Shown here piece by piece: positions 1-26,975 of a stretch of 64,000 nt of DNA; position 1 is the stretch's first letter; every line of letters begins with the position of its first letter. Both the position numbers and the translations under genes were made by a program. The notes beneath the pieces were generated by a model. That model was not told the DNA's origin, did no database searches, and saw nothing but the letters and a program-made list of their open reading frames with translations. Origin of the DNA: Ostrea edulis (taxonomy: Eukaryota); the NCBI RefSeq assembly GCF_947568905.1, contig NC_079173.1, positions 31,310,001 through 31,374,000 on the forward strand. Reading direction: 5' to 3'.

Positions 1-2830
1 GGGGAAATCTTCCTAATTCATAATACACTAAGCTATTGCACGTACTTTTTTTTTTTTACCCCTAAAACGTTTTTACAGAATAATGCATGTAATTTTTCAA
101 CATATTTGCCTTTATGAAAACCCCAAACTTCACATCCGTAATCTAAAACACTGTTTACATATGTATCAAAAACAGAACACTTAGTTTTAATGTTAAATTG
201 GTATTTCCTTAGTTTACTGTTAATTGCAAAAAACGCTTTCCTCCCTTGATCTGCTACATGTTTTTGTGTAATGTTAAACTTTCCATTATAATTAAATAAC
301 ATTCCTAGATAATTAAATTTATCAACCGTCTCAAGCTCCCTCCCATTGTAGAAAAATGTTTCATTACCTCTTATTTTACCTCCGTTTCTGAAGATCATTA
401 TTTTAGTTTTATCGACATTTAAAGTTAATTTCCATTCATTGTTATAAACGTGTAAAGTGTCGAGCATACGTTGTAGGGACTCAGGACTCTCAGCAAACAG
501 AACCATATCGTCAGCGTACATTAATAAAAACAAGTTTAACATATTCAATGGAACAAATGAACAGTGCTCTCTAATAAAATGCATTTCACAATCATTCACA
601 TATAAACTGTACAATATAGGTGACAATACCTCACCCTGGAAAAGCCCTATCCTATTTTCAAAGTATTCCGATAGCAAACCATTGTGCTTTACACAGGATT
701 TTACATTTGTATATAAAGACTGTATAATTTTCAACAATTTTCCATCAATACCTTGTCTTATCAGCTTTCAACATAGTATAAATCTATCTATTAAATCAAA
801 AGCTTTACGATAATCTATGAAACAACAATATAGTCTTCCTCCACGTTTTTTCAAAGTTTTATTTATTAGTGTTTGAAGAGCAAAAATAGCATCGATTGTT
901 GAGTTCCCTGCCCTGAAACCAAATTGTGCATCTGTTATAATATTGTACTTTTTATCCCAATTCAGAAGTCGTTTATTTAAAACTGACGTAAAAAGTTTCC
1001 CAAGACAACTTACTATAGTAATTCCCCTGTAATTATTTGTGTCATCTTGGTCCCCTTTTTTATAAACTGGAACTATAAAACCTTTAGACCAAGATTCAGG
1101 AAAGTAACCCGACATAAAAATAGAATTAAACAATTGTAGTAGAAATGGTATAATAACGTCTTTACAATCCTTTAAAAAATCATTTAATAAACAATCTTCA
1201 CCACAGCTTGTATTTCGTTTCAAATTTCCTATGGCTTTAATTATTTCGTTCTCCGTTATAGCAATATCCAATTCTTCATCGGACGTATACCCATCTGTAT
1301 CTATAATAACATTTGTGACATTGTCATCATTAGCTTTACCCAATTCTTTAAAATGATCAACAAACTGGTTCAGTGAAATGCTATTGGTTGTTTGAGTTTT
1401 ACGTTTACTAAAGTATTTGTGAAATTGTTTGGGATTTTGTTTTCTTAATAAGTCAATCATGTCACCCTCATGCCGTTTGTATTGTCTCATAAGTCGAAGT
1501 TCTATTTTTTAATACTCTTTCTTCTTCCTGATTAAGACTGAATGGTTATCTACTGTTTTATTTATGTTAAATTCATGTAATGCACTTTTATATTCTCTAT
1601 ATGTAATTTTACAAGTTTCACTGAACCAAGGTTTTTCTTCATTTTCCATAACTTTGTTTTTATGCTTACTTTTTAATTCATCACGTTTGGATTTAAAACT
1701 ATGTACATGAACATCACAATATGGCAAAACAATATCATTTAAAACATCACAAAATAAATTAACACATGAATCAGCCTCCTCTTGACTAGAAATATTCGAA
1801 GGAACAATATTGTCAAGCTTATCTCTATTTTGCGTGATTTTCTTAACAACACTCTCAACACTCTCTGTACTCCATATCACTGATTTAGCTGCTCATCTCT
1901 CACTTTCCGGAATAGGGTTTTAAACATTATCATAAACGAACGCAATATCAAAAGAAATAGGTGCATGGTCTGAGAAAGTATGAAAATTGCCTGAATTAAA
2001 TCTTATAAGATCATGAAAATATTTTCCTTCTATTAAAACATAATCTATCAAACTAGTTCCTTGAGAACCATAAAAAGTATAATTTCCATCTAAGTCATGT
2101 GTGTGTCTGCCATTTACTATTCTAAAACCTGTGGCTTTACACAGTGATAATAATTTTCTACCAAAAGTATTAATTTGCGTATCCATATTTTTTCGTTCAT
2201 CCTGGTTAAAAGTAGGTTCACAACTTCATCACTTAACTCGTCATGCTCTATATAATCGGCTCTAGTGCCAGTTCGGGCATTTAAATCACCCGTAATAATG
2301 ACCTTCCATTAGATTTAAAATCAACAATAGAGTCTCCTAAGCTTTGAAACAAATCGATCTCGTCACTACCTCTATCATAAAAAACACTATTTTCAGGTGG
2401 CAGGTAACAAAATGCAAAGAATGTATCCTTATTAACTAATTTTTCGTGAAATCTAAACCAAATAATACATTCTTCCATATTCCTAACTAAACAGATATCA
2501 TCTTTAACATTATTGCGAACTAAAATTGCGATACCCCCACCTCTACATGTCTTACGTGCAAAATGAACTTTTGATAATTTTGTAGGTCGATATCCTCATG
2601 TTCAGATATCCAACATTCTGTTAAACAAATGATATCATACTTTGTAATAATTGCTAAAAATTCATCATCTTGTAGCTTTTGACATAACCCCTTATCAATG
2701 TTCCATGTAAGGATCGAAAGTTCAGACTTACACGTATCGTCACTCTCTACGCACCCCTAACGCCTGATCTGCTGATCCGCCACTGATGTCACAGGCTGAA
2801 CCACGGTATCACACATCGTATTGACCTCAA
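1..2830 (-). mobile_element. Non-LTR retrotransposon (APE + RT, RTE-X/CR1-like), frameshifted, 5'-truncated; its 3' end lies outside the window
   Basis: The APE N-terminus (ILTWNI...YDIICLTECW, ~2730-2590) is followed by ORF pieces with GDLNAR, LVNGR..SLIDY/SDHAP, NYRGI, QFGFR, FIDYRKAFD, QGEVLSP and YADD. A TAG-GGG junction at ~2758 resembles an ORF1 stop. Confidence 0.92.
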
Positions 2831-3125: not shown

Positions 3126-3319
3126 ATCTGAAAGTTTGATTCAAAATTATCTTTCCATAATCTTTGCGAGTGACTACAAATCTGCCAGTTTAATTCTACA
3201 TAGTTACTAAGTATGTCAGCTTTTGGATTGGACCCTGCCAGACACTAGGCTAGCATGAATTTCAGCATACATTTTCTATTTTGGGATATCGCTGTATCTG
3301 CTATCACTATCCAACTACA

Positions 3320-3321
3320 GT

Positions 3322-3351
<30 letters not shown>
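3320..3351. repeat. (GT)n microsatellite
   Basis: Direct reading. Confidence 0.95.
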
Positions 3352-3352
<1 letters not shown>

Positions 3353-3365
3353 GAATAGTTTTTAA

Positions 3366-3718
3366 AGGGGCATTTAATAGCTGTAAAAGTGATGGCAATC
3401 AATTTCTCTCAAAATCTCTCAATGGCATGGGACTATATATTAATAACTAATAAAAACATTTATTTTGTACAAAAACAAGAGAAACCTAATAAAACTACGT
3501 TAGGTAACCGCTTTTAGTGTAAAGAAATAGTGTTGTCGTAAAGCAAGACAATCTTTTTGATTATTCAATATCACCAAAATCACATATTCATGTGCTCGTT
3601 TTGAGGTTAAAAGGTGTTTGAAATAATTAAATACTGGTGTTATTACTCAAATGTATATAATATAGAGTAATTTTCATTTAATTCAAATTTGGATGACAAT
3701 ATGACAGCTAATGCCCCT
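3366..3718. mobile_element. Kolobok-type MITE (353 bp)
   Basis: TTAA|AGGGGCATT..AGCTGT on the left and ACAGCTAATGCCCCT|TTAA on the right. TTAA flanks are at 3362-3365 and 3719-3722. Confidence 0.8.
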
Positions 3719-6682: not shown

Positions 6683-8325
6683 TTTTTATTTAGCTCACCT
6701 GAGTTGAAAGTTCAAGTGAGCTAATCTGATCACATTTTGTCTGTCGTCTGTCTGTCCGTCCGTAAACTTTTCACATTTCCACTTTCTTCTTCTTCAGAAA
6801 CACTGGGCCAATTTCAATCAAACTTGGTAGACATCATCCATGGATGAAGGGGATTCATGTTTGTTCAAATGAAGGACTGTAATCACGGTCACATGAGTAT
6901 CACAACCCATACAAGGAGTCACATATTTGCATTTTTAAAGTCTCAATATGGAGTCCTTTGTGCATATGTTTATGATCTTACAAAATACGCACTCAATTCC
7001 TATTCATTTACAGAAAAAGGAAAAATGGAGTTTTGAAACATAAATCATTTTGACACCCCCCCCCTTTAAAAAAATCCCGGACCCATGAATTTCACAAATT
7101 AAGAAAAGGACATTACGGAGATCATAACCATACATTTAATTTATCCCCCATGACTGTGAAAGTAGAAAAGAAAAAATTAATTTGTCCACATTTTTACCAA
7201 GGGCCTGGACCCCTGACCCAAAAGCCATGAATTTTACAATTTAGTAGAGAGCTTCATGAACATCATCATATTCATGCATTTAGTTTTTCTCATGTATAAG
7301 TATATGACAGTAGAGAAGACGATTTTCTATTATTTGATACAGTTTTACTTACTACATGTATATGGATATATTGGCCCTGCCTTAGGGCTTTAACCCTGAA
7401 CCAGGAACCATGAATTTCACAATGATTCATGGACATCATAATCATAATCAGACCCTGGGGCCAAGAATTTCACTATTTTGGTAGAGGCACCCTGACTCAT
7501 TATAACCATGTACTCAGTTTGTCTGCTAGGTTCTCAGGAGTAGAGACGAAGATTTTTAAAGATTGTATAATTTTTACAGCTTGTACCCAAAATTCATGGC
7601 CCTTAGCGGATTGGGATCATGAATTTCATAATGTAAACCCCCCTTCCCCTACAGATGCTACACACTAAATTTGGTCAAAGTTGGCCAAGTAGTTTAACAG
7701 AATAAGTTGAAAATGTTCAAATGTTAACGCACGACGACGGACGAAAACGGATAGCATTAGGTCATCTGAGTGACTCAGGTGACCTAGAAATGCAAAAATA
7801 GGGTGGGGTCATTTAAAATTCTTCTCAAGAACCACTGGACCAGAAAAGTTCAAATTTGCATGGCAGTTTCCTGACATAGTGCAGATTCACGTTTGTTAAA
7901 ATCATAGCCACCCCACCCACCCCCAGTTTTAAGGTGGGGACACAATGGGGAGGGGGTCAAAGTTTTACATGCAAAGATTTAAGGAAATCTCTAAAAATCT
8001 TCTCAAAAACCACTAGGCCAGGAAAGTTCAAATTTACATGGTAGCCTTCTGACTTGTATCTAAATTTCTTATGGCAAGACCTTTCATTTTATATCATGTT
8101 CTTCGACTCTGAACTCTGAGTTTGACCTGCTTTTAAGAAAATATAACCTATCAAGTATATCAGGAACTATTCTAAAAACTTACCTATTTTTAAATATCTT
8201 CTGAACTTTTCAATGTGGGGATTTCATATTGCTTATATAGATTATTTTTGACAAGACTTTTTTTTATATTTTGGTGTTGACCTTGAATAACGGTAGGGTC
8301 AAAGTGACTCAGGTGAGCGATGTTG
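6683..8325. mobile_element. Helentron-like non-autonomous element with a second related element nested at ~6890-7790, in the last IP6K intron
   Basis: The left end reads TTTTAGCTCACCTGAG..TCAAGTGAGCT followed by (CTGT/CCGT)n, and the right end GACTCAGGTGAGCGATG. The nested copy ends GGTCATCTGAGTGACTCAGGTGACCTA. Family assignment is from recalled bivalve Helentron structure. Confidence 0.65.
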
Positions 8326-10560: not shown

Positions 10561-11053
10561 TCAGACTTTCTTATCATCTACCATAATATTTTTCATTTAG
10601 AATAGGAATGAAATTAGCCAAGCATGGACATCCTTTCAAAAGAACACGATTTTCCCTGACCTCTATCTTTTACATGCAATGAATGATATCGTGTGTATAC
10701 TTCCAGGTTCATTTTGTTGTTGTTATATCTTCAAAATTCAGTTTTGCCCTCTTTATTTTAATAGTTGAAGTAGAGTTTATGAAGGTTACCTGTGCGTAAC
10801 GAATGTATTACAATATGTGTATATATCAATCTAAAATCTCCACCACAGACAACTTATTTTTCTTGCATATGAAGACAAAATCCGTTTTGATAACTTAAAG
10901 AGTCCGTGAAGTCAAAGTCAAAGTTTTGATTAATTGGTGTAGAATAACACGAAAGTCAATATCCCAAAATTTTACAGTCAATATAGCGGCGATAAGGAAA
11001 TTATTCCCGTTCAAAGTTGTCGATTTTCGCACCTGATTAAAACCAATCAAGGC

Positions 11054-11099
11054 AACTTCCGGTTGTACTATTATTAGCAAAATACTTGCGTGACGTCAC
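11054..11099 (+). promoter_or_regulatory. Putative KolX promoter motifs (ETS-like ACTTCCGG, CRE-like TGACGTCA)
   Basis: The motifs lie ~20-60 bp upstream of the KolX ATG. An ETS-like CACTTCCGG also precedes the transposase (~20174-20182). Motif match only. Confidence 0.35.
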
Positions 11100-11116
11100 T
11101 TTACATCAGCTTTGAA

Positions 11117-12591
11117 ATGGCAACTGTAAACGAGAACAGCGTAACCTCGGATTCTTCGTCGGATATTGACCTACACATGTCATTTGAGATATCATCCTTC
11201 GAAGAAGAACACGAGGAACATCAGCAGGACATAGTCCCATATCGGTTTGAACCTGAAGCGACTGATCTTAGCGAATCGGATGGTTCAAGCGAAGACGAAG
11301 TCGACGACCAGCACAGACTAGAAAATACAGATTGGTACAACTTTCCCTATCTTTTATTTGTTACCCATGTAATTAAATTGATAAAATATATCTATAAACT
11401 TTATAACTTCACAGCTTATGCGTGTAGAAAAAAAATAATTGTATCCACGCTATTGAAAACGTTTGGCCATTGATCAGGTCCAGCACAGTTTCTTCATTTA
11501 GCTCTCATTATAAACGTAATTATAATAGCTTGATTAAGCTAGATTAGATTGAATTTGTTAAGTGTAGTGGCGTAGCCAAGAAGTCGCATGACAATTTTTG
11601 AACGTGTTTTTACTTTGAAGTGACCACAACACTGTCCTGATTAGAGTTCATAACAAAAAGTCAATCATTTTAAGAATGTTAATGAAAAGAAAATTTCTTC
11701 TGTGTTGTTAACTGTCCACTACCCTGTGTGCGTTGAAACATACATGTAGATAACAGGGTTTTGACAAAATATGAGGAAATGGGTATATATTATAGTATAA
11801 TAGTACCCATTTGCTCATACTGTGTCAAAACCCCGTGGATAAGTATGATGACTTTACAATTTGGAATTTTAAACTTTTAAAATAATCCTCAACAATCAAA
11901 ATACTGAAGGATCAGTTTAAGAATTATTTTTTTGTTTACAATGTGTTGTATTGACATCAAGGAAATTGCTAAATAAAGAGAGTGCTGCACCTGGTAATCA
12001 TGTAATTAAGCTGCCATGTAATATTTTACCTGCTTTTCTATTTGTCTTCAGGAAATTAATTCATAGCAAATACTTCATTAACTAATGATTCAGTAATACA
12101 TGTTGATAATGCAATTACAATTTTAGGTGCAATTGTGGATCATGCACACCCATGCCCACAGCATTAGAAAGCAAATGCTGCTCTGAAATTCCACAGATTG
12201 TCGAGAAATTTGTCTTATAGTGATGATTTAACCTGCATTACAAGACATCCTGGATTCCAGACTGTTTGTCTAGACGTCTTTGTCCTGGAGACTGCATACT
12301 ACCAGTATCGTTCTCAGTATGGAGATATACAGAACAGCATGAATGAGTAAGAATGATGTTTTATTATCAATAATTATTAGGAATTCAACAAAAGTGGTGT
12401 ATTCAGTTGTGTAACAATTTATACATTTTTATCATAGGAGAAACAGATATACCGCATATCGTCAACTAGCTCGTTGGTGTTGGGGCTACTTAGGAAAGAG
12501 TGTTCGAGTTCCCCTCCCCTCCTGTGCAGTAACAAAGATCCGTGAGACATTCAGCTCAGAGGAATATCACGGATATCAAGACCCAGAATGA
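11117..12591 (+). CDS. KolX: KolX protein (P2X7 cytoplasmic ballast/ZCD-like), 3 exons, one +1 frameshift
   Basis: Exons 11117-11334, 12127-12346 and 12438-12591, with GT-AG introns in consistent phase 2. Translation: acidic N-terminus, VPYRFEP, WCNCGSC..ESKCCSE..CITRHPGF..CLD..RYTAYRQLARWCWGYLG..RVPLPSCAV..IR..F. An extra T at 12209-12211 shifts the frame. Confidence 0.88.
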
Positions 12592-13017
12592 GTAAGCATA
12601 ATTTGACTCAAAGTAAAACATTTTTTAAAAAGTTTAAAAAAAGCAATATTTCTCATGATGAAAAAAATATTTATAATATTATACAAAAGTTAAAAACATA
12701 AGCAAGAAAAAGAACACTAAAAATAAAAAAATATCTGTAAAGATATCTATTTTTTAATTAGAATAATTTAAATCAATGAAAGCATCAGCTACAAAATAAA
12801 TCCTGCACCCAGGAATGGGACGTGGGCCCTGCTTACATGTTTCCATGTCTTTAATGACTATACAAGGGGAATTATTTACACTATAGCTACATACTATGAC
12901 ACTAAAAATAAAGCAATCTAATACTAAGTTATTTACATATGCAATATACTACACAACTATATACCTGATGGACGTGATAAAGTTTTGTTCATCGCACATG
13001 TTCATCACACTTCTCTT

Positions 13018-16000
13018 CTATACTGGTGTCTCTTTCCTCCTAAAACGAGATCTGAAATGCTGCACTGCCTCACTTTTTTCAGGATGCACAAAGTTACTGG
13101 AAAGTGGTGGTGGCTGTATTTCTGGCAAGCAGGAGACAGGTGGTTGATGGGGTGATGTAGCATCAACTGAAGCTTCCATGGATGCGAATGTCTCAGTCAT
13201 CAATGAAGTTACATACCCTGAAATGAAGTCAATATGCAATAACTGTGTCATATGAGAATCTTAATTTCTACTCTTCTAGGTGCTCATTGTTTTCCATAAA
13301 TTCAAATTAAATTTTTTAAATTCTTTATACTGTTTCTATTTTATTGGTATATATATATATAGACTTTATTTAGGCATTCCCATTAGTCAAGAGAGGGAGA
13401 GAGAAAAAGAGGAGAGGAAAGGAGTATTGTTGTAGTACTATATGTTGAATCTACAGTTCTCTTTCGCACACTGTACTCTCCATGCTTAAACTTGGGAAAG
13501 CTGATCTTGAACTGCATGTTCCCTTCCTTTGTAGCAGCCTGCACTCTTGACGTATTTTCATTGAAATGAAGAGCAGCAACGATCAACCTTAAAACAATAT
13601 TGCTATAAAATTACTTATCTTAAACATGCTTTGGTCAATTCAACTTAATTAGTAGATTATCATACAGGAGCACAAAAAATATGGGGCAGATGGAAGGATT
13701 TAATTTTTTAATATATATTTCCCGAGAGAAAAAAAAATTAATGACAAAAGACATCACAGTGTTAATCAAGTTAAAATTCAAAGAATCCTTGGTAGAAGAT
13801 ACAAAACCAACATTCTGTGACTTTAATCATTCACTCATGTCACTGGGAAGCAAGTTTGTTTGAAATTGTAAATTTTGCGAAAATAAAAAAAAATCGAGGT
13901 GACTCCCTTTTTTTGAGGGGCGGGCGGGGTTGTTGATCTATCAATTGATTTTATTTGGCCTTGCATAAAATATACAAGCAGCATGGGTTATTGAACATTC
14001 ATGAAATTTCTGAAGCATAAACATACCTGCAGTACATGCCATAGTAAGAGAAGGCCACCATTTTGGGGGCAAAGTGGTTGACAGTACTATGGAATGCCTC
14101 TATCTGTGATGTCTGGTACAATGGGGATAGCTTGGGAATGTCCCTTTTCATCTGATTGGACAAGATGATGTCACTAATCTTCTCACTTGCTTTTGATCCT
14201 TTTTGAAAATGATATAAGAAAAAATTAGTAAAAATGAAATCAATAAACATTCACAGTTTTTAATAAGGCTCAACACTTTTATAAAAACCATAATATGCTA
14301 ACAAAAGAAAATGTTTAATTATCAACAGACCTATGCAAAGAACAAGAGGCCCACAGGCCTTAATGGGGCACCTAAGGATCATAGCCCATACGGGGTGCCT
14401 GAACCCATGAATTTCACAATACAGGTAGAAAGCTTTATGGACATCATAATCATGCCTTTAGTGTTTCTCAGTTCTGTATGGAAGTAGAAGAAGAAAAATT
14501 TCTAAGATTTAATACATTTTCACTGCGTGTCCATATTGACCCCACCAAAGGGCCAGGAGTCATAAACTTCACAAGTTAGAGATTTTCATAGACGTTAAAA
14601 TCATGCATTTAGTTTTTCGCCAATGTATATGGGAGTAGAAGATTTCCCAGGGTTCGAAATTAACTTTTTCAAGCACTAGTCCGTACGGACTAGTCACTGT
14701 TGATGTTCACTAGTACGCAAAACATTTCACTAGTCCGTCCAGTACATCATATTAAATGATCTTCATTTTATTCAACAGTATTTAATGAAACCAAACACAT
14801 CACAGTTGCAATCAATTTAATTTCTGACACATACAGAAGAAAGAGACCACCATATTTTATTTCGCATTCTAGATCTTCAGAAGCATACAATATTAACCTC
14901 CGAGTTAATCCTTTTATAAACATCCATAAGTGCGTTTGAGATCGACATTCCTGTTGTTTTGGTGCTCAGATCTTAGAGCCACAGGAGTTCGAAATTTTAT
15001 CAATAAAGTCAATAAAATTCACTCGATTGACCAAGTCATGAGCTATAGTGTTATGAACTACTGTGTTAGAGCATAGACATATAACCGTTATATGTCTATG
15101 GTTAGAGTCGCGAATGACGAGAACATGTGCGCACAAACGTGCATGTTCTCAGACCACACTACTTGCAATTCTTGCACATAGAATACGTTCTCGTGATGTA
15201 TACTCGGCGTTCGGAATCGGCAGGAATTTGACAATTTGTGCACGTTCGAAGAACGGCGGTCTCGAATGCACTCCATGTGTTTGGAAGCTCAGGATGTCAT
15301 AGTCACGCAAACACTTAACCATGCAGGTAATTAATCGACCATAAGTTCAAACATCTAAGAGACTCGGACAAATCTTGCTAAAAATCTACCATATTCAAGA
15401 TTGATTTCTAGAGAGTTCACTAGTCCGACACGTTTTTTACTAGTCTCGGACTTACGGACAAGAGTTAATTTCGAACCCTGTTTCCCAATATTTAATACAT
15501 TTTCACTATATGGCCCCACCTTAGGACCTGAACCCCTGACCTAGGGATCATCAAATTTACAACTTAATGGGCTACCCAATCATTCTAAATATCTGTTATT
15601 TGCAATTTAGTATCAATAGCATGAAAGAGGATGTCTTTTGAATGTTTAAAACTCTATACCAAATTTGGTCTTGTCCTGGAGTCAGAACCCCTACCCTAGG
15701 GATCATGAAAGTTACAATTTTGGTAGAGGCTTTCCTGTTCTACATTACTATGTATTTAGTTTTTCTCACATACATGTGGATATAAAGAAAATTTGTCAAA
15801 TTTGGGCAGTTTTTGTCCTGCCCCTTAGACTCCAGGAGTGCAGGAATCCTTAAATTTACAATTTATGTCCACCTTGTTCAAAAAATGCTACATACCAAAG
15901 TTGAAAAGAATTGGCATGGTAGACATCAAAAAGTAAAAAATGTTCAATTGTTAACACATGACGAAGGACGACGACCGCAGACCAATTGCAATAGGTCATT

Positions 16001-19000
16001 CGAGTAAACTTTAGTGATCTAAAATTTTAACAAGTGGTTCTACCTGGTTTTATCCACTTCTTCTTTCGTTCGTCGCCATAAAACATGCCATGGGCACACG
16101 ATGGGAATAGCTCATTGTGTCCCTCATGCTTGTTGTGAACATGGTTTTCAACGGATTCCCACTTTGCCCACATCAAGTCCCCATCCCCATTAGGTGTAGA
16201 GGCTGCTACCCAATATAGGTGATTTGTCAGGCTCCTGCTCCACTTCGATAGCTGTCCACATTCACTCTGTTTGGCGGCAGCCAGGACTTTTTTCTTTAAA
16301 CCTACATTGAATAAACAGGACAAACTCAGATAATTCTCAATGCATATTTTCTACAGTTCTCTCCAAACTTCAAATAATTAAGCATGCATAGCTATGTGTC
16401 TAGTAAATGTCTGCAAATGTTGCGAGCATAAATCAGAGTGAACAATTAAAAATATTACCTTTAGCAACATGCCACACATCATAGTAATGAGTGGTCTCGG
16501 GTAAATTTTCCCTGATCCACTTCTGGATTTGTAGATGGCGGTCAGTCACGATCGTCCCTATCTCCAGATCGTTATTTTTTACCCAGTCAACAGCACGCTC
16601 GAGACCTCTTTTCTCCATACCATTACTATTCTTTACTTCATTACTCTACAAAATTGTATAACAATATAAATAAGGAGAAAAAGTAAACCACATCTCACAC
16701 ACATCATCAAGAACTTGAAATCACAAATACAACTTTCAAAATAAACTTCTTAAAATAGATGTTTAAATATCATACATAAAGACTAGTTAATGTCAAATCT
16801 TTCCTTTCATTCATTTATGCAAATACCTGAACTAGCTGGATGTCAATCACAATTCCTTTTTCAAGGTCAATAGTGCTGTAGGAGCCAAACTTGGCACAGT
16901 GACCAGGGGAGTCAGCTCGCCCATCTCCACCAACAATCAGTGGCTCCCCTCGTTCCTCCGCTTGCCTGACATACATCTCCTGGTGTCTGTTCCACACACG
17001 ACCAATGACAGGAAACAGCACAGATGCCTGGTGGGAATAAAATGTTCTACTTGTTATGGTTGCAACTCCCATAAACTGCAGAACCCGCAGAACTTTAGCA
17101 GCAAGGGCTCCAGAGAACAGAATGCTGGCAGATAATCCGAGGTTTCCTACCGGAATGTTTCCAAGGGAGGGCTGGCTACTCCATTGCCAAGTAAATCCAC
17201 AGAATTCACACTCTGCACTAATCCTGGCCATCGTCCCTATCACCTGATGAACAGTGGCTGTGGCGTGTCTATGGCACCTCTTGCAGCTACTGAATAGCTC
17301 CAACAACTTTGATCTGGACACTATAAACTTTCCTTCATCCAGTGGGTTGTAGGGCTTTTCATTGCTAAAACATTTCAAATTAAACTGATTATATAGCTTA
17401 GGTTTTCCTTAGTACTTCAACTGATAGGATTTTTCAGACACTTTTTTCAACAATAGATATATAATGTTGTTTTGTTTTAATAGAAAATAGTTCAGAATTA
17501 CATAATCAATTTTTTAAAAAATTTCTACAACTTCAATCTGAATTTACTTAGAATGCTAATTCCCCCCCCCCCCCCCCTCAATTAAACACTTGAATTCTCA
17601 CAGAATGCAAAATAGAGCTTACTTATTATTATGGATATGAGAATCATCTGAACTGGCACAGCTACTAGATGGTTCATACAGTGAGGCAGCCTCACTCCCT
17701 ACTTCCTCTATTGACTCTCCCCCACTTGACAAATCCAGGACAGGAACTGCTGCTGGTGGTACTTGTGGAGTGGGCAAGTCATCCCTGCCATTAAATTGTA
17801 TACCAATGCTGCGAACACGTGGTTGGAGATTAACTTGCAGCCCTGGAGAGTAAAATGGCCATTAACAATCTGCCCAATTGTAAAAAGTGACTTTTTTGAG
17901 TAACAAAATACAAACAGGAGAGAATTGATTTGTATTAAAATTTCTATTTTATCTAAAACTTTTTATTGTGTTTCTGGGTTTTTTTAATTGTAACAAAAAC
18001 ATGAATAAACATTAACTGTACATAGAATCAATTCACTGATATAATATTATTGTCTGTAAACATTAAATTTGACCTTTCTCTTTATTCTTTGCAGCCACTT
18101 GGATCTTAACACTGCGTTTCCTAGGTTCTTCTGTCTGACAGGCCATTGATATGCTACTCTCTTCCTAAAATAGATATAAATATTGAGTATTCTGTAGAAT
18201 ATGCAAATGCAAACACTTTTTAAACAATTTTAACTAGTTTTACTGTTTCAGAAATGTTTGATTTATTAACCTACATTTGAAAACAGATTTCTGTTTTGAC
18301 AATTTTCAAACATGATCTATAACCATTTCCAATCAATTGTTATAGAAATATGTGGAAATTGTTATTTGTGAAATTCTCCTACAGAGTTTAAACTTTAAGA
18401 ATTATACCATTAGTCACGCGGGCTCCGGGATTTTGCTATTTCGGAACCCACCGAAGAATTTTGTAGCCCACCAACTCAAATAATGTAAAATAGTCTCACT
18501 ATCAATATTTATATATATATATGTTTATCAGTGTTCATTCCATATCAACATCAAGCAAAGCATCCCAACCTCACTTTCCTCGAACCATGGACAGGGCTCG
18601 GAATTAACATATATGCTCGTCAGTCTGTGATTGGTTAAACGTCTGGCGGACTGACATTCATCTGTTTTAATCAGTCCGATGGGACTGGTTAAATTCCTAA
18701 AGCATCATTTTGGAAAATGTATTTATGAATATGGATTATCACAATACCGAACCCGATATAAAATACTTTTTTGAAAAGAAACTGTACTGGCCATGTGGGT
18801 TACCAAGATTTCAATTGTACTCGCTCAACCCAAATTTCACTTGCATTTGGTGAGTGAACAGGTGTTAAGTTTAAACCCTGGTTTAAATTGATTTATGTAA
18901 ACAGGAATACCTGAATGGGTGCTTGCTGACTCTCAACATGCTCTTGTAGGTCTTCCTCTACTGGTATTTCTGTATTGTTGTCACACAGCAACTCTGTCAG

Positions 19001-20101
19001 TATCTATAATGAACCAATGCAACAATTGTTACAAGTGTAACCACATCCTTGAGGAAATGCAGTACTAAGTCTAGGAAATTCTGGGTGGGGATCTGGACCC
19101 CCCCCCCCCCCCCCACGCGAATCCTCAATCTGAGCATGAAAGCAACAATGAAGCGAGAAACGTAGAAAACATAAGCATGCATCCCATCTCAATTTTTTTT
19201 GCCTAATGAAAAAAAAAAATGTTTTACTGAGTACCATAGTCTAAATAAAGGAATAATGAATTGACAAGCAACTCATATAGATCCTTAGCTAAAAATTTAC
19301 CTACACTCAAATTTTTGCAAGTATAGTAAATTAGTAATTAATTACGAAGATGAGATTCAACAAATAATCAGATAGGTATGCTATTTGCTTATGAGACAGG
19401 TGCATTGTACCCACTGCACTTCTGTGTCACTGTCTCGCCTCACTGATGCGTGAAGTCCAGCAATTCATGAAGTCAAAATAAAGGACATCTTTGTATTTAA
19501 CATGTTACTGTACATTGATTTATATTGTTTCATATGGTAAATGGAAATGATTGCATTAGACATTGGCTACTTTCAGCTAGACATGTACATTGTTTATAAA
19601 GTTATTAAGTTGAAACCTGCATCGCTGTGGGAATAATACTTCTGAGTGTGTTTGATTAAAAAAAACAACAACAACGAAGAACAGAAAAGAAAATTACCAT
19701 GTTTTTTGCGCGCTTTGCATATGCTCTTCGTTCGGGGGGGGGGGGGGGGGGGGGGGGGTCGTGAGCTGAGGAGACTGAAGAAAGGCGTCGTTGAGTTCAT
19801 CCCTCTTCCGCTTAGGATATATCGATGGCACAGATCCCTTACGAAGACACTTATTCGCAGGAATGCCGAAGCCTTTCATCAGCGAAAAACAGGCCTCGTA
19901 GCAATCCTCGTTAAAATGTTCGCTACAAATCACTGTGTACTGCGATGGCCCAGGCCAGTCTGCCCTTGTTAGCTTTACAAAACGAACCCAGGCTGCTCGC
20001 TGACGCTGATCTTTTGGGAAAATATGCACCGAAACTCCATCTGCTTGTCTTTTGCTACAACCTGCCACAACGCACATCCGTCCTTTATTCTTACTAGCCA
20101 T
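13018..20101 (-). CDS. Kolobok transposase (THAP + C4 zinc finger + DDE), 10 exons, ~770 aa, one frameshift in a poly-G run
   Basis: Exons (-): 20101-19698, 19003-18911, 18164-18074, 17842-17623, 17364-16827, 16645-16459, 16301-16044, 14198-14027, 13587-13439, 13217-13018. All introns are GT-AG with matching phases. Motifs: THAP CVVAGC..CSEHF..SVPSI, GGDGRADSPGH, VTDRH, YDVWH, QTSQIEAFH, ALHFNEN. Confidence 0.9.
14341..16024 (+). mobile_element. Helentron-like non-autonomous element in transposase intron 7
   Basis: Starts AACAAGAGGCCCACAGGCCTT and ends GACGACCGCAGACCAATTGCAATAGGTCATTCGAG..GTGATCTAAAA. The interior resembles 7080-7790. Confidence 0.7.
14648..15480. mobile_element. TIR MITE (CAGGG termini, hAT-like) nested in the Helentron-like element
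   Basis: Perfect 18-bp TIR CAGGGTTCGAAATTAACT / AGTTAATTTCGAACCCTG, subterminal ACTAGTCCG repeats, and flanking direct repeat TTTCC. Confidence 0.85.
18382..18880. mobile_element. TIR MITE (hAT-like ends) in transposase intron 2
   Basis: CAGAGTTTAAACTT / AAGTTTAAACCCTG (13/14 match). No clear TSD. Confidence 0.65.
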
Positions 20102-20196
20102 TTCGATGTTATAATCACTACCGAGCTCTACCAATTTTGCATTGAGAATGGCGCCAATGATGTTAGTTGGCGTCACTTCCGGTAGAGCCCGTTTTC

Positions 20197-22608
20197 GGGG
20201 TCGGTGTAATGACCTGATAAGTGTAATGACCTGATTGACCTGATGGGGTATAATTCAATCTCCGCTGAAGTATATATCAAAAAGATGATATTTTAAGATT
20301 TGTTCTGATTAAATATACACCTTTCTTTCATATAATAATGATTTAAAAAAATTATATGCGTCTTAATGCATTATAATTCATAATTTTCAAACCCGAGGGG
20401 TGTAATGACCTGATATTTAGTGTAATGTCCTGATGGGACATTTCTACAAAAATGATATATTTCTACGATGTTTTATGCACCCAAATCATTTATGTATATG
20501 AGTTGGTATATATCTTATGATATTCAATTATTGTTTTTAATAATACCCGGTTATTTTTTATTATTTTAGATTTCAACTAAACCTAGGGTGTAATGTCCTG
20601 ATATCCGAATGACCTGATGACACGATAGAGGGTTATAGAGTAATGTCCTGATGTGCTGTTTTTATAGTAGACAAAGCTTCTTTCGGCGTTATTTGTTTTT
20701 ATATTGAATATTTTCACAAACATTAATTTTTTGAAATGATATTTTTAAAGAAAATCGAAGATTTATAAATTAACAATCATAGTTATTTTGTTATTTTAAA
20801 TTTGCAGAAGTGTAATGACCTGATATTGGAATGACCTGATGAAAACTGTTACGAGTATTATTGATAAATTCAAATTAAAGGATAGATTTGTTTAATGTTA
20901 ATAATGATATGTTGATTGCATAATTTAGATAGTGATAGTACTGAGCGAAATGAAACATTGGACAAAACATTTGTTTCCTGAATTATATCAAATAAATATG
21001 TACATTCATATGTTCATGTAGCTGGAAAAAACATTGACCAAAAACATGTAAGAGGTCAAAAAACTTTTTAAAAAATAATGTTTCAATTTCTGCTGGTGTG
21101 TAGAATGAAATTAAACAAAAACTATTTTATTATGCATGGATTTCCAAATTGGAACAATACAGAATTGGCATTCAATGAGTTTGCATACTTATAATTTGGA
21201 GAAGTTGATAAAGGAAAATAAAGTATCCAATCGCGATAGTCCAAGTGACGCAAGCTAAATAATTTGGTAATTGTGAGTAACTACCGTATACCTGGCTTAT
21301 TTCGACTTCAAGGCTGAAATACCGCGATGTAAAAACAAATTAATTTCAATTTAGCAATTAATTTTCAGAATATCAAAGGCACATCTCTAATCGCTGAAGT
21401 TAAAGGATGAATGGTAGTAAAGAATTCGTTAACATCAAAAATAATTTAAACTATCACGTCAAATACAGATAACAAATTGCAGTTAATATTGCAGTTTTAT
21501 ACATATCTTGATTTATATTCGATAATCTTGTTATTTATATTTGAAAAATTGAACAAGATTGTCAAATATAAATCAAAATTTCCGCATATAAATATCAAGA
21601 TTATCGAATTCAAATATCAAGATTATCGAATATGAAGCAAGATTTGTATAATATTACAACGTTTTACTTGGTAATTTTTCATTAATATTTTCAAAAGAAG
21701 AACTTGAATAATAAAAAACACTGTTCATACGATAAAAACATGTATAACTCTGGTATAATTCGTAAATTATATATATTTTATATTGTCATGCATCGTACAT
21801 GTGTATGTCATAACATATATTGTTTGTGATTGTGTACTTATCTTGATTTTTTTCTTCTTGAATTTTGTATGCCCAACATAGCCCAGAATTGGATGAATGA
21901 ATAAATAATTAAGATAAACGTTAGAAATAATAAATGAAAAGTATGACCTAAAACATTGCATGCGACACACAAACAAATAATTTCAATATACCAATTTTTC
22001 GAATAGCAAATATACTCCTTTCAAAATGCCGAAATTAAAATAATCTTTATGAAAACTTTAGAAATAATCAATATATAAATACTACTTCTTTCATATAACT
22101 TTCAAATCAACTTGTTAAAGTAATAAAGCTATACGACACGTCTTATCAGGTCAATCTTCATCAGGACATTACACCGCAGAAAATCTCATCAGGTCATTCT
22201 TCATCAGGACATTACACCACCGCGGAAGAAAACTCGTTATAATACTCGTTTAAACAACATTTAATAATTATGTTTTACAACATATTAAATATAACTATTC
22301 ATACAAAATAATGACTACAAAAAATAAATATATACACTTAACATTACAGTTCAGATTGGTAAAATACTTCATCAGGACATTACACTAATTATCAGGACAT
22401 TACACCCTTTGCTTTTGCTAAATGCAATAAAAAGGGTATTAAAATAAATTCTTGTAATTTCTTCTTTTCTAATATCATAAAGAATGATAAAACAAGATAT
22501 AAGAAACAAAAATTATTTCAATACAACGTTTATTTCCTTAATAATATTACTTTATACCCCATCAGGTCAATCAGGTCATTACACTTATCAGGACATTACA
22601 CCCACCCC
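20197..22608. mobile_element. 2.4-kb non-autonomous TIR element (MULE/P-like TSD length) between the transposase gene and the Kolobok right end
   Basis: ~57-bp TIRs (GGGGT.GGTGTAATG.CCTGATAAGTGTAATGACCTGATTGACCTGATGGGGTATAA), many subterminal TAATG(A/T)CCTGAT motifs in mirrored orientation, and flanking direct repeat (CC)CGTTTTC of 7-9 bp. Confidence 0.85.
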
Positions 22609-22920
22609 CGTTTTCGTTATCGTAAAGGTGTGGATTAGCAATATTTTGATATTTCGTGCAATAACTCGCATATTAAAAAGCACTGAGTGATCAGACTTGT
22701 TTTTTTCTGTTCTTTATTATATAAACAATATTTAAAGAAGCACTTTGAAAACGGCTTCACGGACACTTTAATTTATATTATTGATAATGTATTATAATGT
22801 ATTGAACGAATTATTGTTCACTTTCATTTTAATATCCTAACATTACTTTCGAATTATCTTTTAGTCGTGTTCAGTGCATTCAATTATTCCAGTGGATACT
22901 GAATACTGGACCCCCCCCCA

Positions 22921-23020: not shown

Positions 23021-23240
23021 ATGAAATATTTACCATCCGTTTAAAGTGTGACGACTTAATGAAATATTTACCATCCGTTTAAAGTGTGACGACTTAATGA
23101 AATATTTACCATCCGTTTAAAGTGTGACGACTTAATGAAATATTTACCATCCGTTTAAAGTGTGACGACTTTTAAATGAAATACCGGTATTTACCGTCCG
23201 TTTAAAGTGTGACGACTTGATGAAATATTTACCATCCTGA
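23021..23240. repeat. 38-bp minisatellite, ~5.5 copies
   Basis: ATGAAATATTTACCATCCGTTTAAAGTGTGACGACTTA starts at 23021, 23059, 23097 and onward, with no spacers. Confidence 0.92.
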
Positions 23241-23640
23241 TAAAGTATGACGACTTTGTAACATTCCTTGGCCATTATTTTATGGACTTGTTCTACCCCA
23301 CCTCTCAAATATCTATATTCTCTCCCCGTAACTATTTTGACGCACAATAAATTATCTAGTATTCAATAAAGTCACGAGTTCCGAGAACAATCTGGACGAC
23401 ATATCACAATATTGCATACATGTACTTATGTCACCCGTTAGATCGTCATGTTCACGTGTTTCTTCAACATTGCAAAAGAGCAGTGGACTCTTACTGGTAA
23501 CCCACAGAATTTTGATTAAGGAAGTGTTCATTAAAAAAGAGGACTATTTTTTTCTGAAACCTTTTATATATTGTACATGTATGTATTTGTTGATAATAAA
23601 TGCTATATACCGTTGAAAGTTATATCATCATCATTCATCA

Positions 23641-23673
<33 letters not shown>

Positions 23674-23711
23674 CGTCTCTAAGATAAACAACTTTGTATT
23701 CATTATTTGTA

Positions 23712-23753
23712 TTCACCTGATGATGGATGTTAAAATCCAGAAAGCGCTAGTGG
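23712..23753 (+). ncRNA. Minimal type I hammerhead ribozyme motif (Penelope-like LTR remnant)
   Basis: Stem I TCAC/GTGG, core CTGATGA (23717-23723), stem II TGGAT/ATCCA, GAAA (23740-23743), palindromic stem III AGCGCT and a UA cleavage site (after 23749). Confidence 0.65.
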
Positions 23754-23837
23754 TTTAAATATTTTTTGGAACTGTATATTTTCCTACTTTTTTTAATGAA
23801 TTATTTTGACTGTGTGATATCAACTCTTTCTATTTGG

Positions 23838-23885
<48 letters not shown>

Positions 23886-25875: not shown

Positions 25876-26184
25876 AACACTGGTAAGACGCTTAAACCAC
25901 TGTAACCTATCCGCTTTGTGGATGTTGTGGGAGGTAAGCAGTGAAATATGTCTGTCGATATATGCGAGCACATTCCTTCCTACCTCCATTTTTTCAGAGG
26001 TGTTCTGTATTTCGATTAGGAGATATGCGTAGGGCGGGGCATTGACGTTGTCTTTCCTGTTTTACCCCCCCCCCCAAAAAAAAAATCGGAGCCACACTAG
26101 ATGTATCAAGAATGGTTCAGGAGTGCATCAACGCTATGAAAAAGGTTTTCACAGTAAAAAAAAAACAACTAAAATAAGACATAT

Positions 26185-26975
26185 ATAATGAGACAATTAA
26201 AACATGACCTTCATAATGAAACAACTAAAGCATGACCTCTATAATGAGACAACTAAAGCATGACCTTCATAATGAGACAACTAAAACATGACCTTTATAA
26301 TGAAACAGCTAAAATATGACCTCTATAATGAGACAACTAAAACGTGACCTCTGTAATGAGACAACTAAAACATGACCTTTATAACTAGACAACTAAAGCA
26401 AGACCTCTATAATGAAACAGCTAAATATTGACCTATGTAATGAGACAACTAAAGCATGACCTCTATAATAAGACAACTAAAGCGTGACCTCTATAATGAG
26501 ACAACTAAACCATGACCTCTATAATAAGACAACTAAACCGTGACCTCTATAATGAGATAACTAAAACATAACCTTTATAATGAGACAACTAAAGCATGAC
26601 CTATATAATGAGACAACTAGAGCGTGACCTATATAATGAGACAACTAGAGCATGACCTATATAATGAGACAACTAAACCATGACCTTTATAACGAGACAA
26701 CTAGAGCATGACCTATATAATGAGACAACTAAAATAAGATCTATATAATGAAACAGCTAAATTTTGACCTATATAATGAGACAACTAGAGCATGACCTAT
26801 ATAATGAGACAACTAAAATATGACCTATATAATCAGACAACTAAAGCGTGACCTATGTAATGAGACAACTAAAATATGACCTATATAATCAGACAGCTAA
26901 AATATAACCGATATGATGAGACAGCTAAAATATGACCTATATATTGAGACATCTAAAGCACGACCTTTATAACGG
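26185..26975. repeat. 28-bp minisatellite, ~28 copies
   Basis: Unit ATAATGAGACAACTAAAGCATGACCTCT with variants. Confidence 0.95.

What the first reader, a model, noticed from the sequence alone, without database searches (positions are those of the whole stretch)
10899..22767. Complete two-gene Kolobok transposon, close to autonomous
Seen: both TTAA duplications, matching 13-15 bp TIRs, a 10-exon THAP-DDE transposase and a convergent second gene, each transcribed inward from an end. Known: Kolobok elements target TTAA and carry an accessory KolX gene, but the superfamily is poorly characterised experimentally. Inference: minus ~4.6 kb of nested insertions the core is ~7.3 kb, and this may be a young family with active siblings.
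Basis: partly seen in the sequence, partly recalled or inferred. Interest (0 to 1): 0.72.

Follow-up and report, generated by a model that had tools for sequence, protein, structure and literature searches.

The report
Defective copy of young Kolobok transposon
This is a genuine two-gene "Kolobok" jumping gene of an already described type. This copy is broken in both genes and carries two later insertions, but it belongs to a small, very young family in which some sister copies still look fully functional.

Summary
A THAP-DDE transposase lies on the minus strand and a convergent KolX gene on the plus strand.

It belongs to the Kol0 lineage of Kolobok. That lineage's two-gene layout, and the P2X7-"ballast" nature of KolX, were published by Kojima & Bao in 2022.

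- The canonical element is about 8.7 kb, not 7.3 kb.
- Nested DNA totals about 3.2 kb, not 4.6 kb. It consists of an 831-bp MITE in a transposase intron and a 2.4-kb non-autonomous element in the transposase 5' leader.
- I find 9 coding exons, not 10.
- The copy is not close to autonomous. KolX has a 2-bp frameshift, and the transposase is out of frame at a 25-nt poly-C tract in exon 1.

The "young family" inference is supported:
- The genome has 30 TTAA+end matches (about 15 loci) against 0 in the control.
- Eight independent copies differ from one another by 0.3-2%.
- Two of those eight have both genes fully open.
- A roughly 96%-identical relative is spliced exactly as modelled in contigs of one run from a differently labelled organism.
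- A paralogous site with contiguous flanks lacks the element.

The look-alike copy 144 kb away is part of a duplication of at least 61 kb, not a separate insertion.

This is a new member of a known kind. Interest is modest.

The parts
10895..10898 (.). Left TTAA target-site duplication
   Evidence: The same TTAA flanks both ends of 8 independent copies.
10899..10911 (+). Left terminal inverted repeat AGAGTCCGTGAAG (5'-RR terminus)
   Evidence: (I7)
11117..11334 (+). KolX exon 1 (ATG; acidic N-terminus ending ...RLENTD/W). The GT donor follows it.
   Evidence: Open in all copies.
11869..11871 (.). Site in KolX intron 1 where this copy and its twin lack about 73-76 bp that the siblings have
12127..12346 (+). 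KolX exon 2 (WCNCGSC...CC...CITRHPGF...CL cysteine cluster). It is broken here by a 2-bp deletion at about 12211/12212, which gives a premature TAG at 12218-12220.
   Evidence: The intact sibling exon matches P2RX7_C profile positions 82-127 only weakly (E 0.21).
12438..12591 (+). KolX exon 3 (YRQLARWCWGYLG...PSCAV..IR), with stop TGA at 12589-12591
   Evidence: Pfam P2RX7_C 2.7e-6, 27.9 bits against a cut-off of 23.5, profile positions 144-190 of 192
13383..13587 (-). Transposase exon 9 (last exon, includes the stop)
   Evidence: The intron upstream is confirmed by the spliced joint 3273>3705 in L001.
14027..14198 (-). Transposase exon 8, carrying the catalytic E (QTSQIEAFHS)
   Evidence: Collinear with the ...LENFHS block of Kolobok-1_XT in the PMC9587614 supplement.
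14650..15480 (.). Nested insertion A: an 831-bp MITE (TIR CAGGGTTCGAAATTAAC, 5-bp TSD TTTCC) inside transposase intron 7. It does not interrupt coding sequence.
   Evidence: (I17). Dozens of full-length copies and more than 1000 first-look candidates elsewhere.
16044..16301 (-). Transposase exon 7: zinc finger HVHNKH...CAH between DxxH and E
16459..16645 (-). Transposase exon 6: second catalytic D (TDRH) and the DVWH (C/DxxH) signature
   Evidence: Pfam MULE 1.5e-5 at the profile end
16827..17364 (-). Transposase exon 5: first catalytic D (GGDGRADSPGHCAKF)
   Evidence: The nearest Atlas cluster is mostly molluscan.
17623..17842 (-). Transposase exon 4
18074..18164 (-). Transposase exon 3
18911..19003 (-). 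Transposase exon 2
   Evidence: The donor is confirmed by joint 7004>7753. The acceptor is inferred from AG plus reading frame.
19698..20101 (-). Transposase exon 1: ATG at 20101, THAP domain, then a poly-C (poly-Pro) tract at 19734-19758. The tract is 25 nt here, which puts the rest of the exon out of frame (+2).
   Evidence: THAP Pfam 8.5e-15. The donor position equals the end of an X1 contig at L001:8551.
20198..22606 (.). Nested insertion B: a 2409-bp non-autonomous element (57-bp TIRs, subterminal GTGTAATGACCTGAT repeats, 7-8-bp TSD CGTTTTC). It sits about 97 bp upstream of the transposase ATG, in the 5' leader.
   Evidence: (I1). At least 10 full-length copies at 95-99% identity elsewhere.
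22755..22767 (-). Right terminal inverted repeat (CTTCACGGACACT; YY-3' terminus)
22768..22771 (.). Right TTAA target-site duplication

Best explanation
window:10899-22767 is a non-autonomous (mutated) copy of a young, low-copy family of Kol0-lineage Kolobok cut-and-paste DNA transposons.

Canonical element. It is about 8.7 kb long. It inserts at TTAA and duplicates that site. It ends in 13-bp inverted repeats (AG...CT). It carries two convergent genes, each starting about 220-250 bp inside one end:
- KolX: 3 exons, about 197 aa, a free-standing homologue of the Zn-cluster 'ballast' domain of P2X7.
- Transposase: 9 coding exons, about 717 aa. The order is THAP DNA-binding domain, poly-Pro/basic linker, then an RNase-H-like DDE core carrying the DxxH signature and a zinc finger before the E.

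Inferred mechanism. The THAP domain binds the (sub)terminal sequences, and the DDE core excises the element and reintegrates it at TTAA. The role of KolX is unknown. My best guess is that it is an accessory or regulatory cofactor.

History of this copy, all of it shown directly by the sequence:
- It inserted at a TTAA.
- It then took up an 831-bp MITE in intron 7 and a 2.4-kb element in the transposase 5' leader.
- It suffered a 2-bp deletion in KolX and a length change of the exon-1 poly-C tract that breaks the transposase frame.
- It was then copied, together with at least 61 kb of surrounding DNA, to a site 144 kb away.

Its ends are intact. By inference it could at best be moved in trans by sibling copies. 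Two of the eight siblings sampled have both genes open.
For: Ends and copies:
- TSD and TIR at the stated coordinates.
- Eight copies with unrelated flanks, all TTAA...TTAA with identical ends.
- 30 TTAA+TIR matches in the genome against 0 in the control.
- Copies are 8618-8759 bp long and 0.31-2.0% divergent from one another.

Nested insertions:
- Pairwise alignment to a sibling delimits the two nested insertions.
- Each is a repeat family with its own full-length copies elsewhere.

Protein domains:
- THAP, Pfam 8.5e-15.
- The MULE profile end matches the TDRH...DVWH exon at 1.5e-5, below Pfam's cut-off.
- The core blocks GDGRADSPGH / TDRH..DVWH / TNHL.W / H.H..H..C.H / IEAFHS are collinear, by eye, with Kolobok-1_XT and Kolobok-1_BF in the supplement of PMC9587614.
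- KolX exon 3 matches Pfam P2RX7_C above the cut-off. Its motifs match the KolX rows of the same supplement.

Gene model:
- Seven transposase introns appear as CT..AC (GT-AG on the minus strand) joints in contigs of run X1, with consistent phases.
- The eighth intron fits a contig boundary and the reading frame of 4 copies.
- All splice sites in the window copy are canonical.

Defects and context:
- Per-copy defects are tabulated.
- A paralogous site about 32 kb upstream has contiguous flanks (about 90% identity) and no element.
- The twin copy lies in a duplication of at least 61 kb.

Literature: the definitions of Kolobok, Kol0 and KolX come from PMC9587614 and PMC6004289.
Against: - The poly-C length (25 nt here, 12 in the twin, 11-18 in siblings) is a homopolymer that assemblers often misjudge. 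The transposase frameshift may therefore be an assembly error. The KolX 2-bp deletion is shared with the twin and so is more trustworthy.
- The spliced contigs come from a run labelled as a different organism. They are about 96% identical, and the run's RNA status is only a guess. Transcription in this genome's own species is not shown.
- No insertion polymorphism or excision footprint was seen, so current activity is inferred only from low divergence and open frames.
- Homology to named Kolobok transposases rests on a by-eye motif comparison with supplement text, not on a scored alignment.
- The paralogous empty site reads TTCA, not TTAA.
Confidence: 0.9

Rival explanations
1. The window copy is itself autonomous or one step from it. 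On this reading the apparent transposase frameshift is only a homopolymer assembly error, and the nested insertions are tolerated.
For: - Exons 2-9 of the transposase are open with canonical splice sites in this copy.
- Insert A is intronic.
- The poly-C length differs between the two near-identical twins, 25 against 12 nt, which suggests measurement noise.
Against: - KolX has a 2-bp deletion and a premature stop. Both twins share it, and all 8 siblings lack it.
- Neither twin's poly-C length restores the frame.
- A 2.4-kb element separates the ATG from the terminal roughly 160 bp, through which sibling-type transcripts run.
- Whether KolX is needed for transposition is unknown.
Confidence: 0.07
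2. It is a piggyBac-type element (the other TTAA-specific superfamily), or a P or ISL2EU element (the other THAP-carrying transposases), rather than Kolobok.
For: TTAA duplication is shared with piggyBac. THAP is shared with P and ISL2EU. The scan found an ISL2EU element elsewhere in this genome.
Against: - The termini are AG...CT, not the CC...GG of piggyBac (PMC9587614).
- The TSD is 4-bp TTAA. P elements make 7-8 bp (my own knowledge), and ISL2EU makes a 2-bp AT (noted).
- The core motifs and the zinc finger are collinear with Kolobok-1_XT and Kolobok-1_BF.
- There is a KolX partner gene, which defines Kol0.
Confidence: 0.02
3. The family is extinct. The open frames in siblings merely reflect a recent burst that has ended, and none of the copies moves today.
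For: - No polymorphic insertion or footprint was observed.
- Only about 15 loci exist, and there is no MITE swarm using these ends.
- 6 of 8 sampled copies have transposase defects.
- No RNA run of the same organism holds the element.
Against: - Pairs of copies differ by only 0.31%.
- Two copies have both genes open with canonical splice sites.
- A 96%-identical relative appears to be transcribed and spliced in another organism's run.
Confidence: 0.3

Closest known systems
Kolobok superfamily, Kol0 lineage (type element Kolobok-1_XT; also Kolobok-1_BF, -1_CTe, -1_Aqu). Kapitonov & Jurka 2007; Kojima & Bao 2022 (PMC9587614).
   Same: TTAA target-site duplication. 5'-RR/YY-3' termini with short TIRs. 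A two-gene layout with a DDE transposase plus KolX. [quoted passage not shown] A KolX cysteine cluster that matches the P2X7 ballast domain.
   Different: This is a distinct family in a different, probably molluscan, host. It has a variable poly-C/poly-Pro tract between THAP and the core. The window copy is mutated and carries two nested elements. Nothing departs from the lineage's definition.
Xenopus XKol full-length Kolobok elements and T2-MITEs (Hikosaka et al. 2018, PMC6004289)
   Same: AG termini, TTAA TSDs, lengths of 7-14 kb, a THAP + DDE + H2CH transposase, and evidence of recent amplification.
   Different: Xenopus has hundreds of thousands of derived MITEs and many domesticated transposases. 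Here only about 15 loci carry these ends, and no MITE derivatives were found with the exact end pattern.
P2X7 receptor cytoplasmic ballast domain (Pfam PF20478) and zebrafish Nanor
   Same: KolX exon 3 matches PF20478 above the cut-off. The cysteine pattern WCxCGxC...CC...CIT...CL...C is shared.
   Different: KolX is free-standing (about 197 aa), is encoded in a transposon and has no channel domain. Zn or GDP binding has not been tested.
piggyBac superfamily
   Same: TTAA-specific integration.
   Different: piggyBac ends are CC...GG, its DDD core is unrelated, and it has no THAP domain. The feature was tested here and not met (AG...CT ends, Kolobok motifs).

Membership tests
Kolobok superfamily | [quoted passage not shown] | tested here: met
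   TTAA on both sides of the window copy and of 8 independent copies. 30 TTAA+end matches against 0 in the control.
Kolobok superfamily | Termini 5'-RR ... YY-3' (unlike piggyBac) | tested here: met
   AGAG... / ...CACT in all copies. The definition comes from PMC9587614 and PMC6004289.
Kolobok superfamily | [quoted passage not shown] | tested here: met
   GDGRADSPGH (D1), TDRH (D2), DVWH, IEAFHS (E) in exons 5, 6 and 8. These are collinear with the Kolobok-1_XT and -1_BF rows in the supplement. The comparison is by eye, not scored.
Kolobok superfamily | Zinc finger between C/DxxH and the catalytic E (the 'H2CH' of Hikosaka 2018) | tested here: met
   HVHNKHEGHNELFPSCAHG in exon 7. The feature is described.
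Kolobok superfamily | N-terminal THAP DNA-binding domain (usual, not universal) | tested here: met
   Pfam PF05485 at 8.5e-15 over profile positions 1-86 of 87. CxxxxC...CSEH and the SVPSIY box are present.
Kolobok superfamily | Transposase groups with named Kolobok transposases in a scored alignment or tree | not tested
   No reference sequences are available by reference in the tools, and Pfam has no Kolobok model. Only weak MULE/Mutator hits were found, which is expected for this clan.
Kol0 lineage | Second gene KolX with the P2X7 ballast fold and conserved cysteines | tested here: met
   PF20478 at 2.7e-6 and 2.1e-6 on exon 3, above the cut-off. Exon 2 is collinear at E 0.21. The motifs match the KolX rows in the supplement. 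The fold itself was not predicted, because that would need the spliced model to be joined.
Autonomous element (this copy) | Both genes open and connected to their ends | tested here: not met
   KolX 2-bp deletion. Exon-1 poly-C out of frame by +2. A 2.4-kb insert in the 5' leader.
piggyBac | CC...GG termini and a DDD piggyBac core | tested here: not met
   AG...CT termini. No piggyBac Pfam hit.

The most novel reading that the evidence does not exclude
This Kolobok family may regulate itself in two ways not described for the superfamily.

1. An in-frame exon-skipping isoform joins exon 3 to exon 7 and removes both catalytic D residues while keeping THAP. It appears in run X1 at about half the depth of the canonical junction. 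It would give a DNA-binding, catalytically dead protein, analogous to P-element repressor isoforms.

2. A hypervariable poly-C tract between THAP and the core (11-25 nt; in frame in only 4 of 10 copies) could act as a slippage-prone on/off switch.

Separately, the two naturally open copies could provide the first experimentally tractable Kolobok + KolX system.
Probability: 0.12. Interest if true: 0.6.

Novelty: new member of a known kind. Interest (0 to 1): 0.3.

Why it matters
I found no report of an experimentally reconstituted Kolobok transposition system. Only one paper in the searchable library mentions KolX, and it infers the protein's nature from sequence alone. That protein is proposed to be the ancestor of the P2X7 receptor's ballast domain.

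This family has about 15 copies, under 1% divergence, some copies with both genes open, and a gene model partly backed by spliced contigs. That makes it a practical starting point for asking what KolX does and how Kolobok cuts and pastes at TTAA.

The window copy itself is an ordinary decayed member. It is useful mainly as a dated record: insertion, then two nested insertions, then a large duplication.

Tried and rejected
- Pfam scans of single exons gave no Kolobok-specific family. They gave only THAP, sub-threshold MULE/Mutator/ISL3 hits and P2RX7_C.
- The look-up of sequencing runs found no run on record as RNA from the organism that holds the element best. Runs X3, X4 and X7 gave contiguous, unspliced coverage and say nothing about expression.
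- An empty-site test by reads was not possible.
Apart from the MITE at 14650-15480, they are present in all siblings as intron sequence.
- The copy at C10:31464849-31476711 is rejected as independent evidence. It has the same flanks and the same nested inserts, and it lies in a duplication of at least 61 kb.
Full report

Yes. TTAA lies at 10895-10898 and again at 22768-22771.

The element starts with AGAGTCCGTGAAG. The reverse complement of its right end reads AGTGTCCGTGAAG, so 12 of 13 positions match. The repeat finder picks this pair up as I7.

This is not a chance match. Searching the window's own 895-Mb genome with the left 602 bp, the right 159 bp and an internal 1.4 kb found 11 or more near-identical copies. 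I fetched eight copies with unrelated flanks. All begin and end at exactly the same bases and all have TTAA on both sides. The pattern TTAA+AGWGTCCGTGAAG occurs 30 times in the genome (15 left-type and 15 right-type ends) and 0 times in the reversed control.

**2. Size and nested DNA**

Independent full-length copies are 8618-8759 bp long, and one copy is internally deleted to 5623 bp. The window copy is 11,869 bp. Alignment to a sibling shows exactly two extra blocks.

- Insert A, 14650-15480, is 831 bp. Its TIR is CAGGGTTCGAAATTAAC and its TSD is the 5-bp TTTCC.
- Insert B, 20198-22606, is 2409 bp. It has 57-bp TIRs, subterminal GTGTAATGACCTGAT repeats and a 7-8-bp TSD (CGTTTTC).
- About 73-76 bp are missing at about 11869.

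Both inserts are repeat families in their own right, with full-length copies elsewhere. A has more than 1000 first-look candidates, mostly at 89-90% identity. B has at least 10 full-length copies at 95-99%.

Nested DNA is therefore about 3.2 kb and the canonical element about 8.7 kb, not 4.6 kb and 7.3 kb.

**3. The transposase gene (minus strand)**

ORF pieces carry a THAP domain (Pfam 8.5e-15) and a match to the end of the MULE profile on the TDRH...DVWH piece (1.5e-5, below Pfam's cut-off).

I laid the contigs of four public runs on a sibling copy (L001:3040-9036). Run X1 gave eight joints whose skipped parts begin CT and end AC, which is GT-AG on the minus strand. X1 is labelled as a different organism and its kind is guessed to be RNA. 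Seven of the joints define consecutive introns. The exon phases deduced from the open frames are mutually consistent.

The eighth intron (exon 1 to exon 2) is inferred. An X1 contig stops matching at L001:8551, which maps to window 19698, exactly before a GTAATT donor. The exon-2 acceptor at 19004-19005 gives phase 0. Four copies have an exon 1 that is in frame with this model.

The model has 9 coding exons in the window:

| Exon | Window coordinates |
|---|---|
| E1 | 19698-20101 |
| E2 | 18911-19003 |
| E3 | 18074-18164 |
| E4 | 17623-17842 |
| E5 | 16827-17364 |
| E6 | 16459-16645 |
| E7 | 16044-16301 |
| E8 | 14027-14198 |
| E9 | 13383-13587 |

All splice sites are canonical. In in-frame siblings the product is about 717 aa.

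The X1 contigs are about 96% identical to this family. They show that a close relative is spliced this way in another organism's run. They do not show that this genome's copies are expressed. Runs X3, X4 and X7 give unspliced, DNA-like coverage.

**4. The second gene (plus strand)**

It has three exons: 11117-11334, 12127-12346 and 12438-12591, with GT/AG sites and consistent phases.

Exon 3 matches Pfam P2RX7_C (PF20478) at 2.7e-6, with 27.9 bits against a cut-off of 23.5. The intact exon 2 of a sibling matches the preceding part of the same profile only weakly (E 0.21).

The motifs WCNCGSC, PMP, CC, CITRHPGF..VCL and YRQLARWCWGYLG line up with the KolX rows (Kolobok-1_Aqu, -1_CTe, -1_XT) printed in the supplement of Kojima & Bao 2022.

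**5. What it is**

Kojima & Bao (PMC9587614) define Kolobok by three features: TTAA duplications, 5'-RR/YY-3' termini, and a DDE core with a C/DxxH signature and, in most lineages, a zinc finger before the E. They state that the original Kol0 lineage encodes two proteins, the transposase and KolX. They also state that KolX has the P2X7 cytoplasmic ballast fold. Hikosaka et al. (PMC6004289) list DDE + THAP + H2CH as the usual transposase motifs, with AG termini.

Every one of these features is present here. The core blocks are:
- GDGRADSPGHCAKF
- TDRH...DVWH
- TNHLYW
- HVHNKH...CAH
- IEAFHS

By eye, they are collinear with Kolobok-1_XT and Kolobok-1_BF in the supplement.

The alternatives fail on tested features:
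- piggyBac fails on the AG...CT termini and on the core motifs.
- P fails on TSD length.
- ISL2EU fails on TSD length.

The host is probably a mollusc. The nearest ESM-Atlas cluster is mostly molluscan, and Kolobok elements are reported as common in bivalves (PMC10294476).

**6. State of this copy**

It is not close to autonomous.

- KolX exon 2 reads GAGAAATTT--GTC where all eight siblings read GAGAAAATTGAGTC. This is a 2-bp deletion that leads to TAG at 12218-12220.
- Transposase exon 1 contains a poly-C (poly-Pro) tract of 25 nt at 19734-19758, which makes the exon 404 nt long (frame +2). After splicing the junction reads as a stop.
- Insert B sits about 97 bp upstream of the ATG. An X1 contig runs through the equivalent point in the sibling and about 89 nt further toward the end. 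By inference, B therefore lies in the 5' leader, between the terminal promoter region and the ORF.
- Insert A is intronic and harmless to coding. Exons 2-9 are open.

One caveat applies. Homopolymer length is error-prone in assemblies. The near-identical twin copy has 12 C, which is also out of frame.

**7. The family**

Pairwise divergence among independent copies is 0.31-1.07%. One older copy stands at about 1.9%.

Of the eight sampled siblings:
- KolX is open in all eight.
- Two copies have both genes fully open, with canonical splice sites.
- In the other six, the transposase defects are as follows:
  - a poly-C frameshift only (2 copies);
  - a stop in exon 7 (1 copy);
  - a poly-C frameshift plus a stop and a 17-bp deletion (1 copy);
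  - a 22-bp deletion plus a stop (1 copy);
  - an internal deletion that removes exons 3-7 (1 copy).

No insertion polymorphism or excision footprint was observed, so current activity remains an inference.

**8. Empty site and duplication**

One exists, about 32 kb upstream at C10:31,288,2xx-31,288,6xx. This older paralogue of the flanks (about 90% identity) runs straight through the insertion point. The window flanks predict GATAAC-TTAA-TTTATATTATTG. The paralogue reads GATAACTTCATGTATATTATTG. It is therefore a single 4-bp site with one substitution (TTCA). It is a paralogous site, not an orthologous one.

The copy at C10:31,464,849-31,476,711 has the same flanks, both nested inserts and the KolX deletion, and differs by 0.23%. 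Sequence sampled at the same offset matches the window from position 1 to about 61,200 at 98-99.5% identity. It is therefore part of a duplication of at least 61 kb, either a recent segmental duplication or an uncollapsed haplotype, and not a separate transposition.

**9. Mechanism**

Shown by sequence: the architecture, TTAA duplication at every insertion, intact ends, and the catalytic and DNA-binding motifs.

Inferred from the families involved: THAP binds the (sub)terminal DNA, and the RNase-H-like DDE core carries out cut-and-paste with integration at TTAA.

KolX function is unknown. From the ballast domain's Zn-cluster and guanine-nucleotide binding in P2X7 (cited in PMC9587614), I guess it is an accessory or regulatory cofactor. 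Its retention as an open frame in all eight siblings, including the transposase-deleted one, fits that guess. At under 1% divergence this is not statistically meaningful.

Two side observations could bear on regulation:
- An in-frame exon 3 to exon 7 joint in X1 (joint 5143>6913, depth 42.8 against 76.4 for the canonical one) would delete both catalytic Ds while keeping THAP.
- The poly-C tract is hypervariable among copies.

**10. Verdict**

This is a real, correctly classified Kol0 Kolobok element. It is a defective copy of a young family of about 15 loci, and a new member of a known kind.

The scan had already noted the KolX/ballast reading on this same window (s1-274757). It had also noted a transposase-less KolX-bearing Kolobok elsewhere in this genome (s1-274734).

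Noticed in passing
window:19734-19758 (minus-strand C-run), and the same site in L001-L010: The poly-C/poly-Pro tract between THAP and the transposase core varies from 11 to 25 nt among copies. It is in frame in only 4 of 10 copies. The two near-identical twin copies differ (25 against 12 nt). This is either real slippage or homopolymer assembly error.
   Followed up: partly
L001:5146-6914 (equivalent to window exon 3 joined to exon 7): Run X1 contains an in-frame exon-skipping joint that removes exons 4-6 (both catalytic D residues) and keeps THAP. Its depth is 42.8, against 76.4 for the canonical junction.
   Followed up: partly
window:1-61247 against G000:C10:31453951-31517950: The whole neighbourhood (at least 61 kb) is duplicated about 144 kb downstream at 98-99.5% identity, with some indels. 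This is either a recent tandem segmental duplication or an uncollapsed haplotype in the assembly.
   Followed up: partly
G000:C10:31286605-31289300 (L012 covers the junction): An older paralogue (about 90% identity) of the DNA flanking the element lies about 32 kb upstream of the window copy. It lacks the Kolobok insertion. The region has therefore been duplicated at least twice.
   Followed up: partly
window:24276-25873: A G-rich 19-bp minisatellite (GGGGTGTGAATTGGAGGGT, about 82 copies) gives a GC skew of +0.89. Tandem arrays also lie at 23021-23256 (38-bp unit) and 26165-26972 (28-bp unit).
   Followed up: no
L001:4440-4839, 3240-3639 and 7440-7639 (introns of the canonical element): Short stretches inside the transposase introns have contig depths 100-1000 times the rest in all runs. 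These are very abundant short repeats (SINE/MITE-like) that the family's founder already carried.
   Followed up: no
window:9860-10488 and 23671-23883: Both flanks of the element contain high-copy repeats: about 630 bp with more than 1400 candidates, and about 215 bp with more than 2300 candidates.
   Followed up: no
G000:C9:32892607-32913608: Two left ends lie 12,360 bp apart with internal parts repeated. This may be a tandem or rearranged pair of family members. It was not examined.
   Followed up: no
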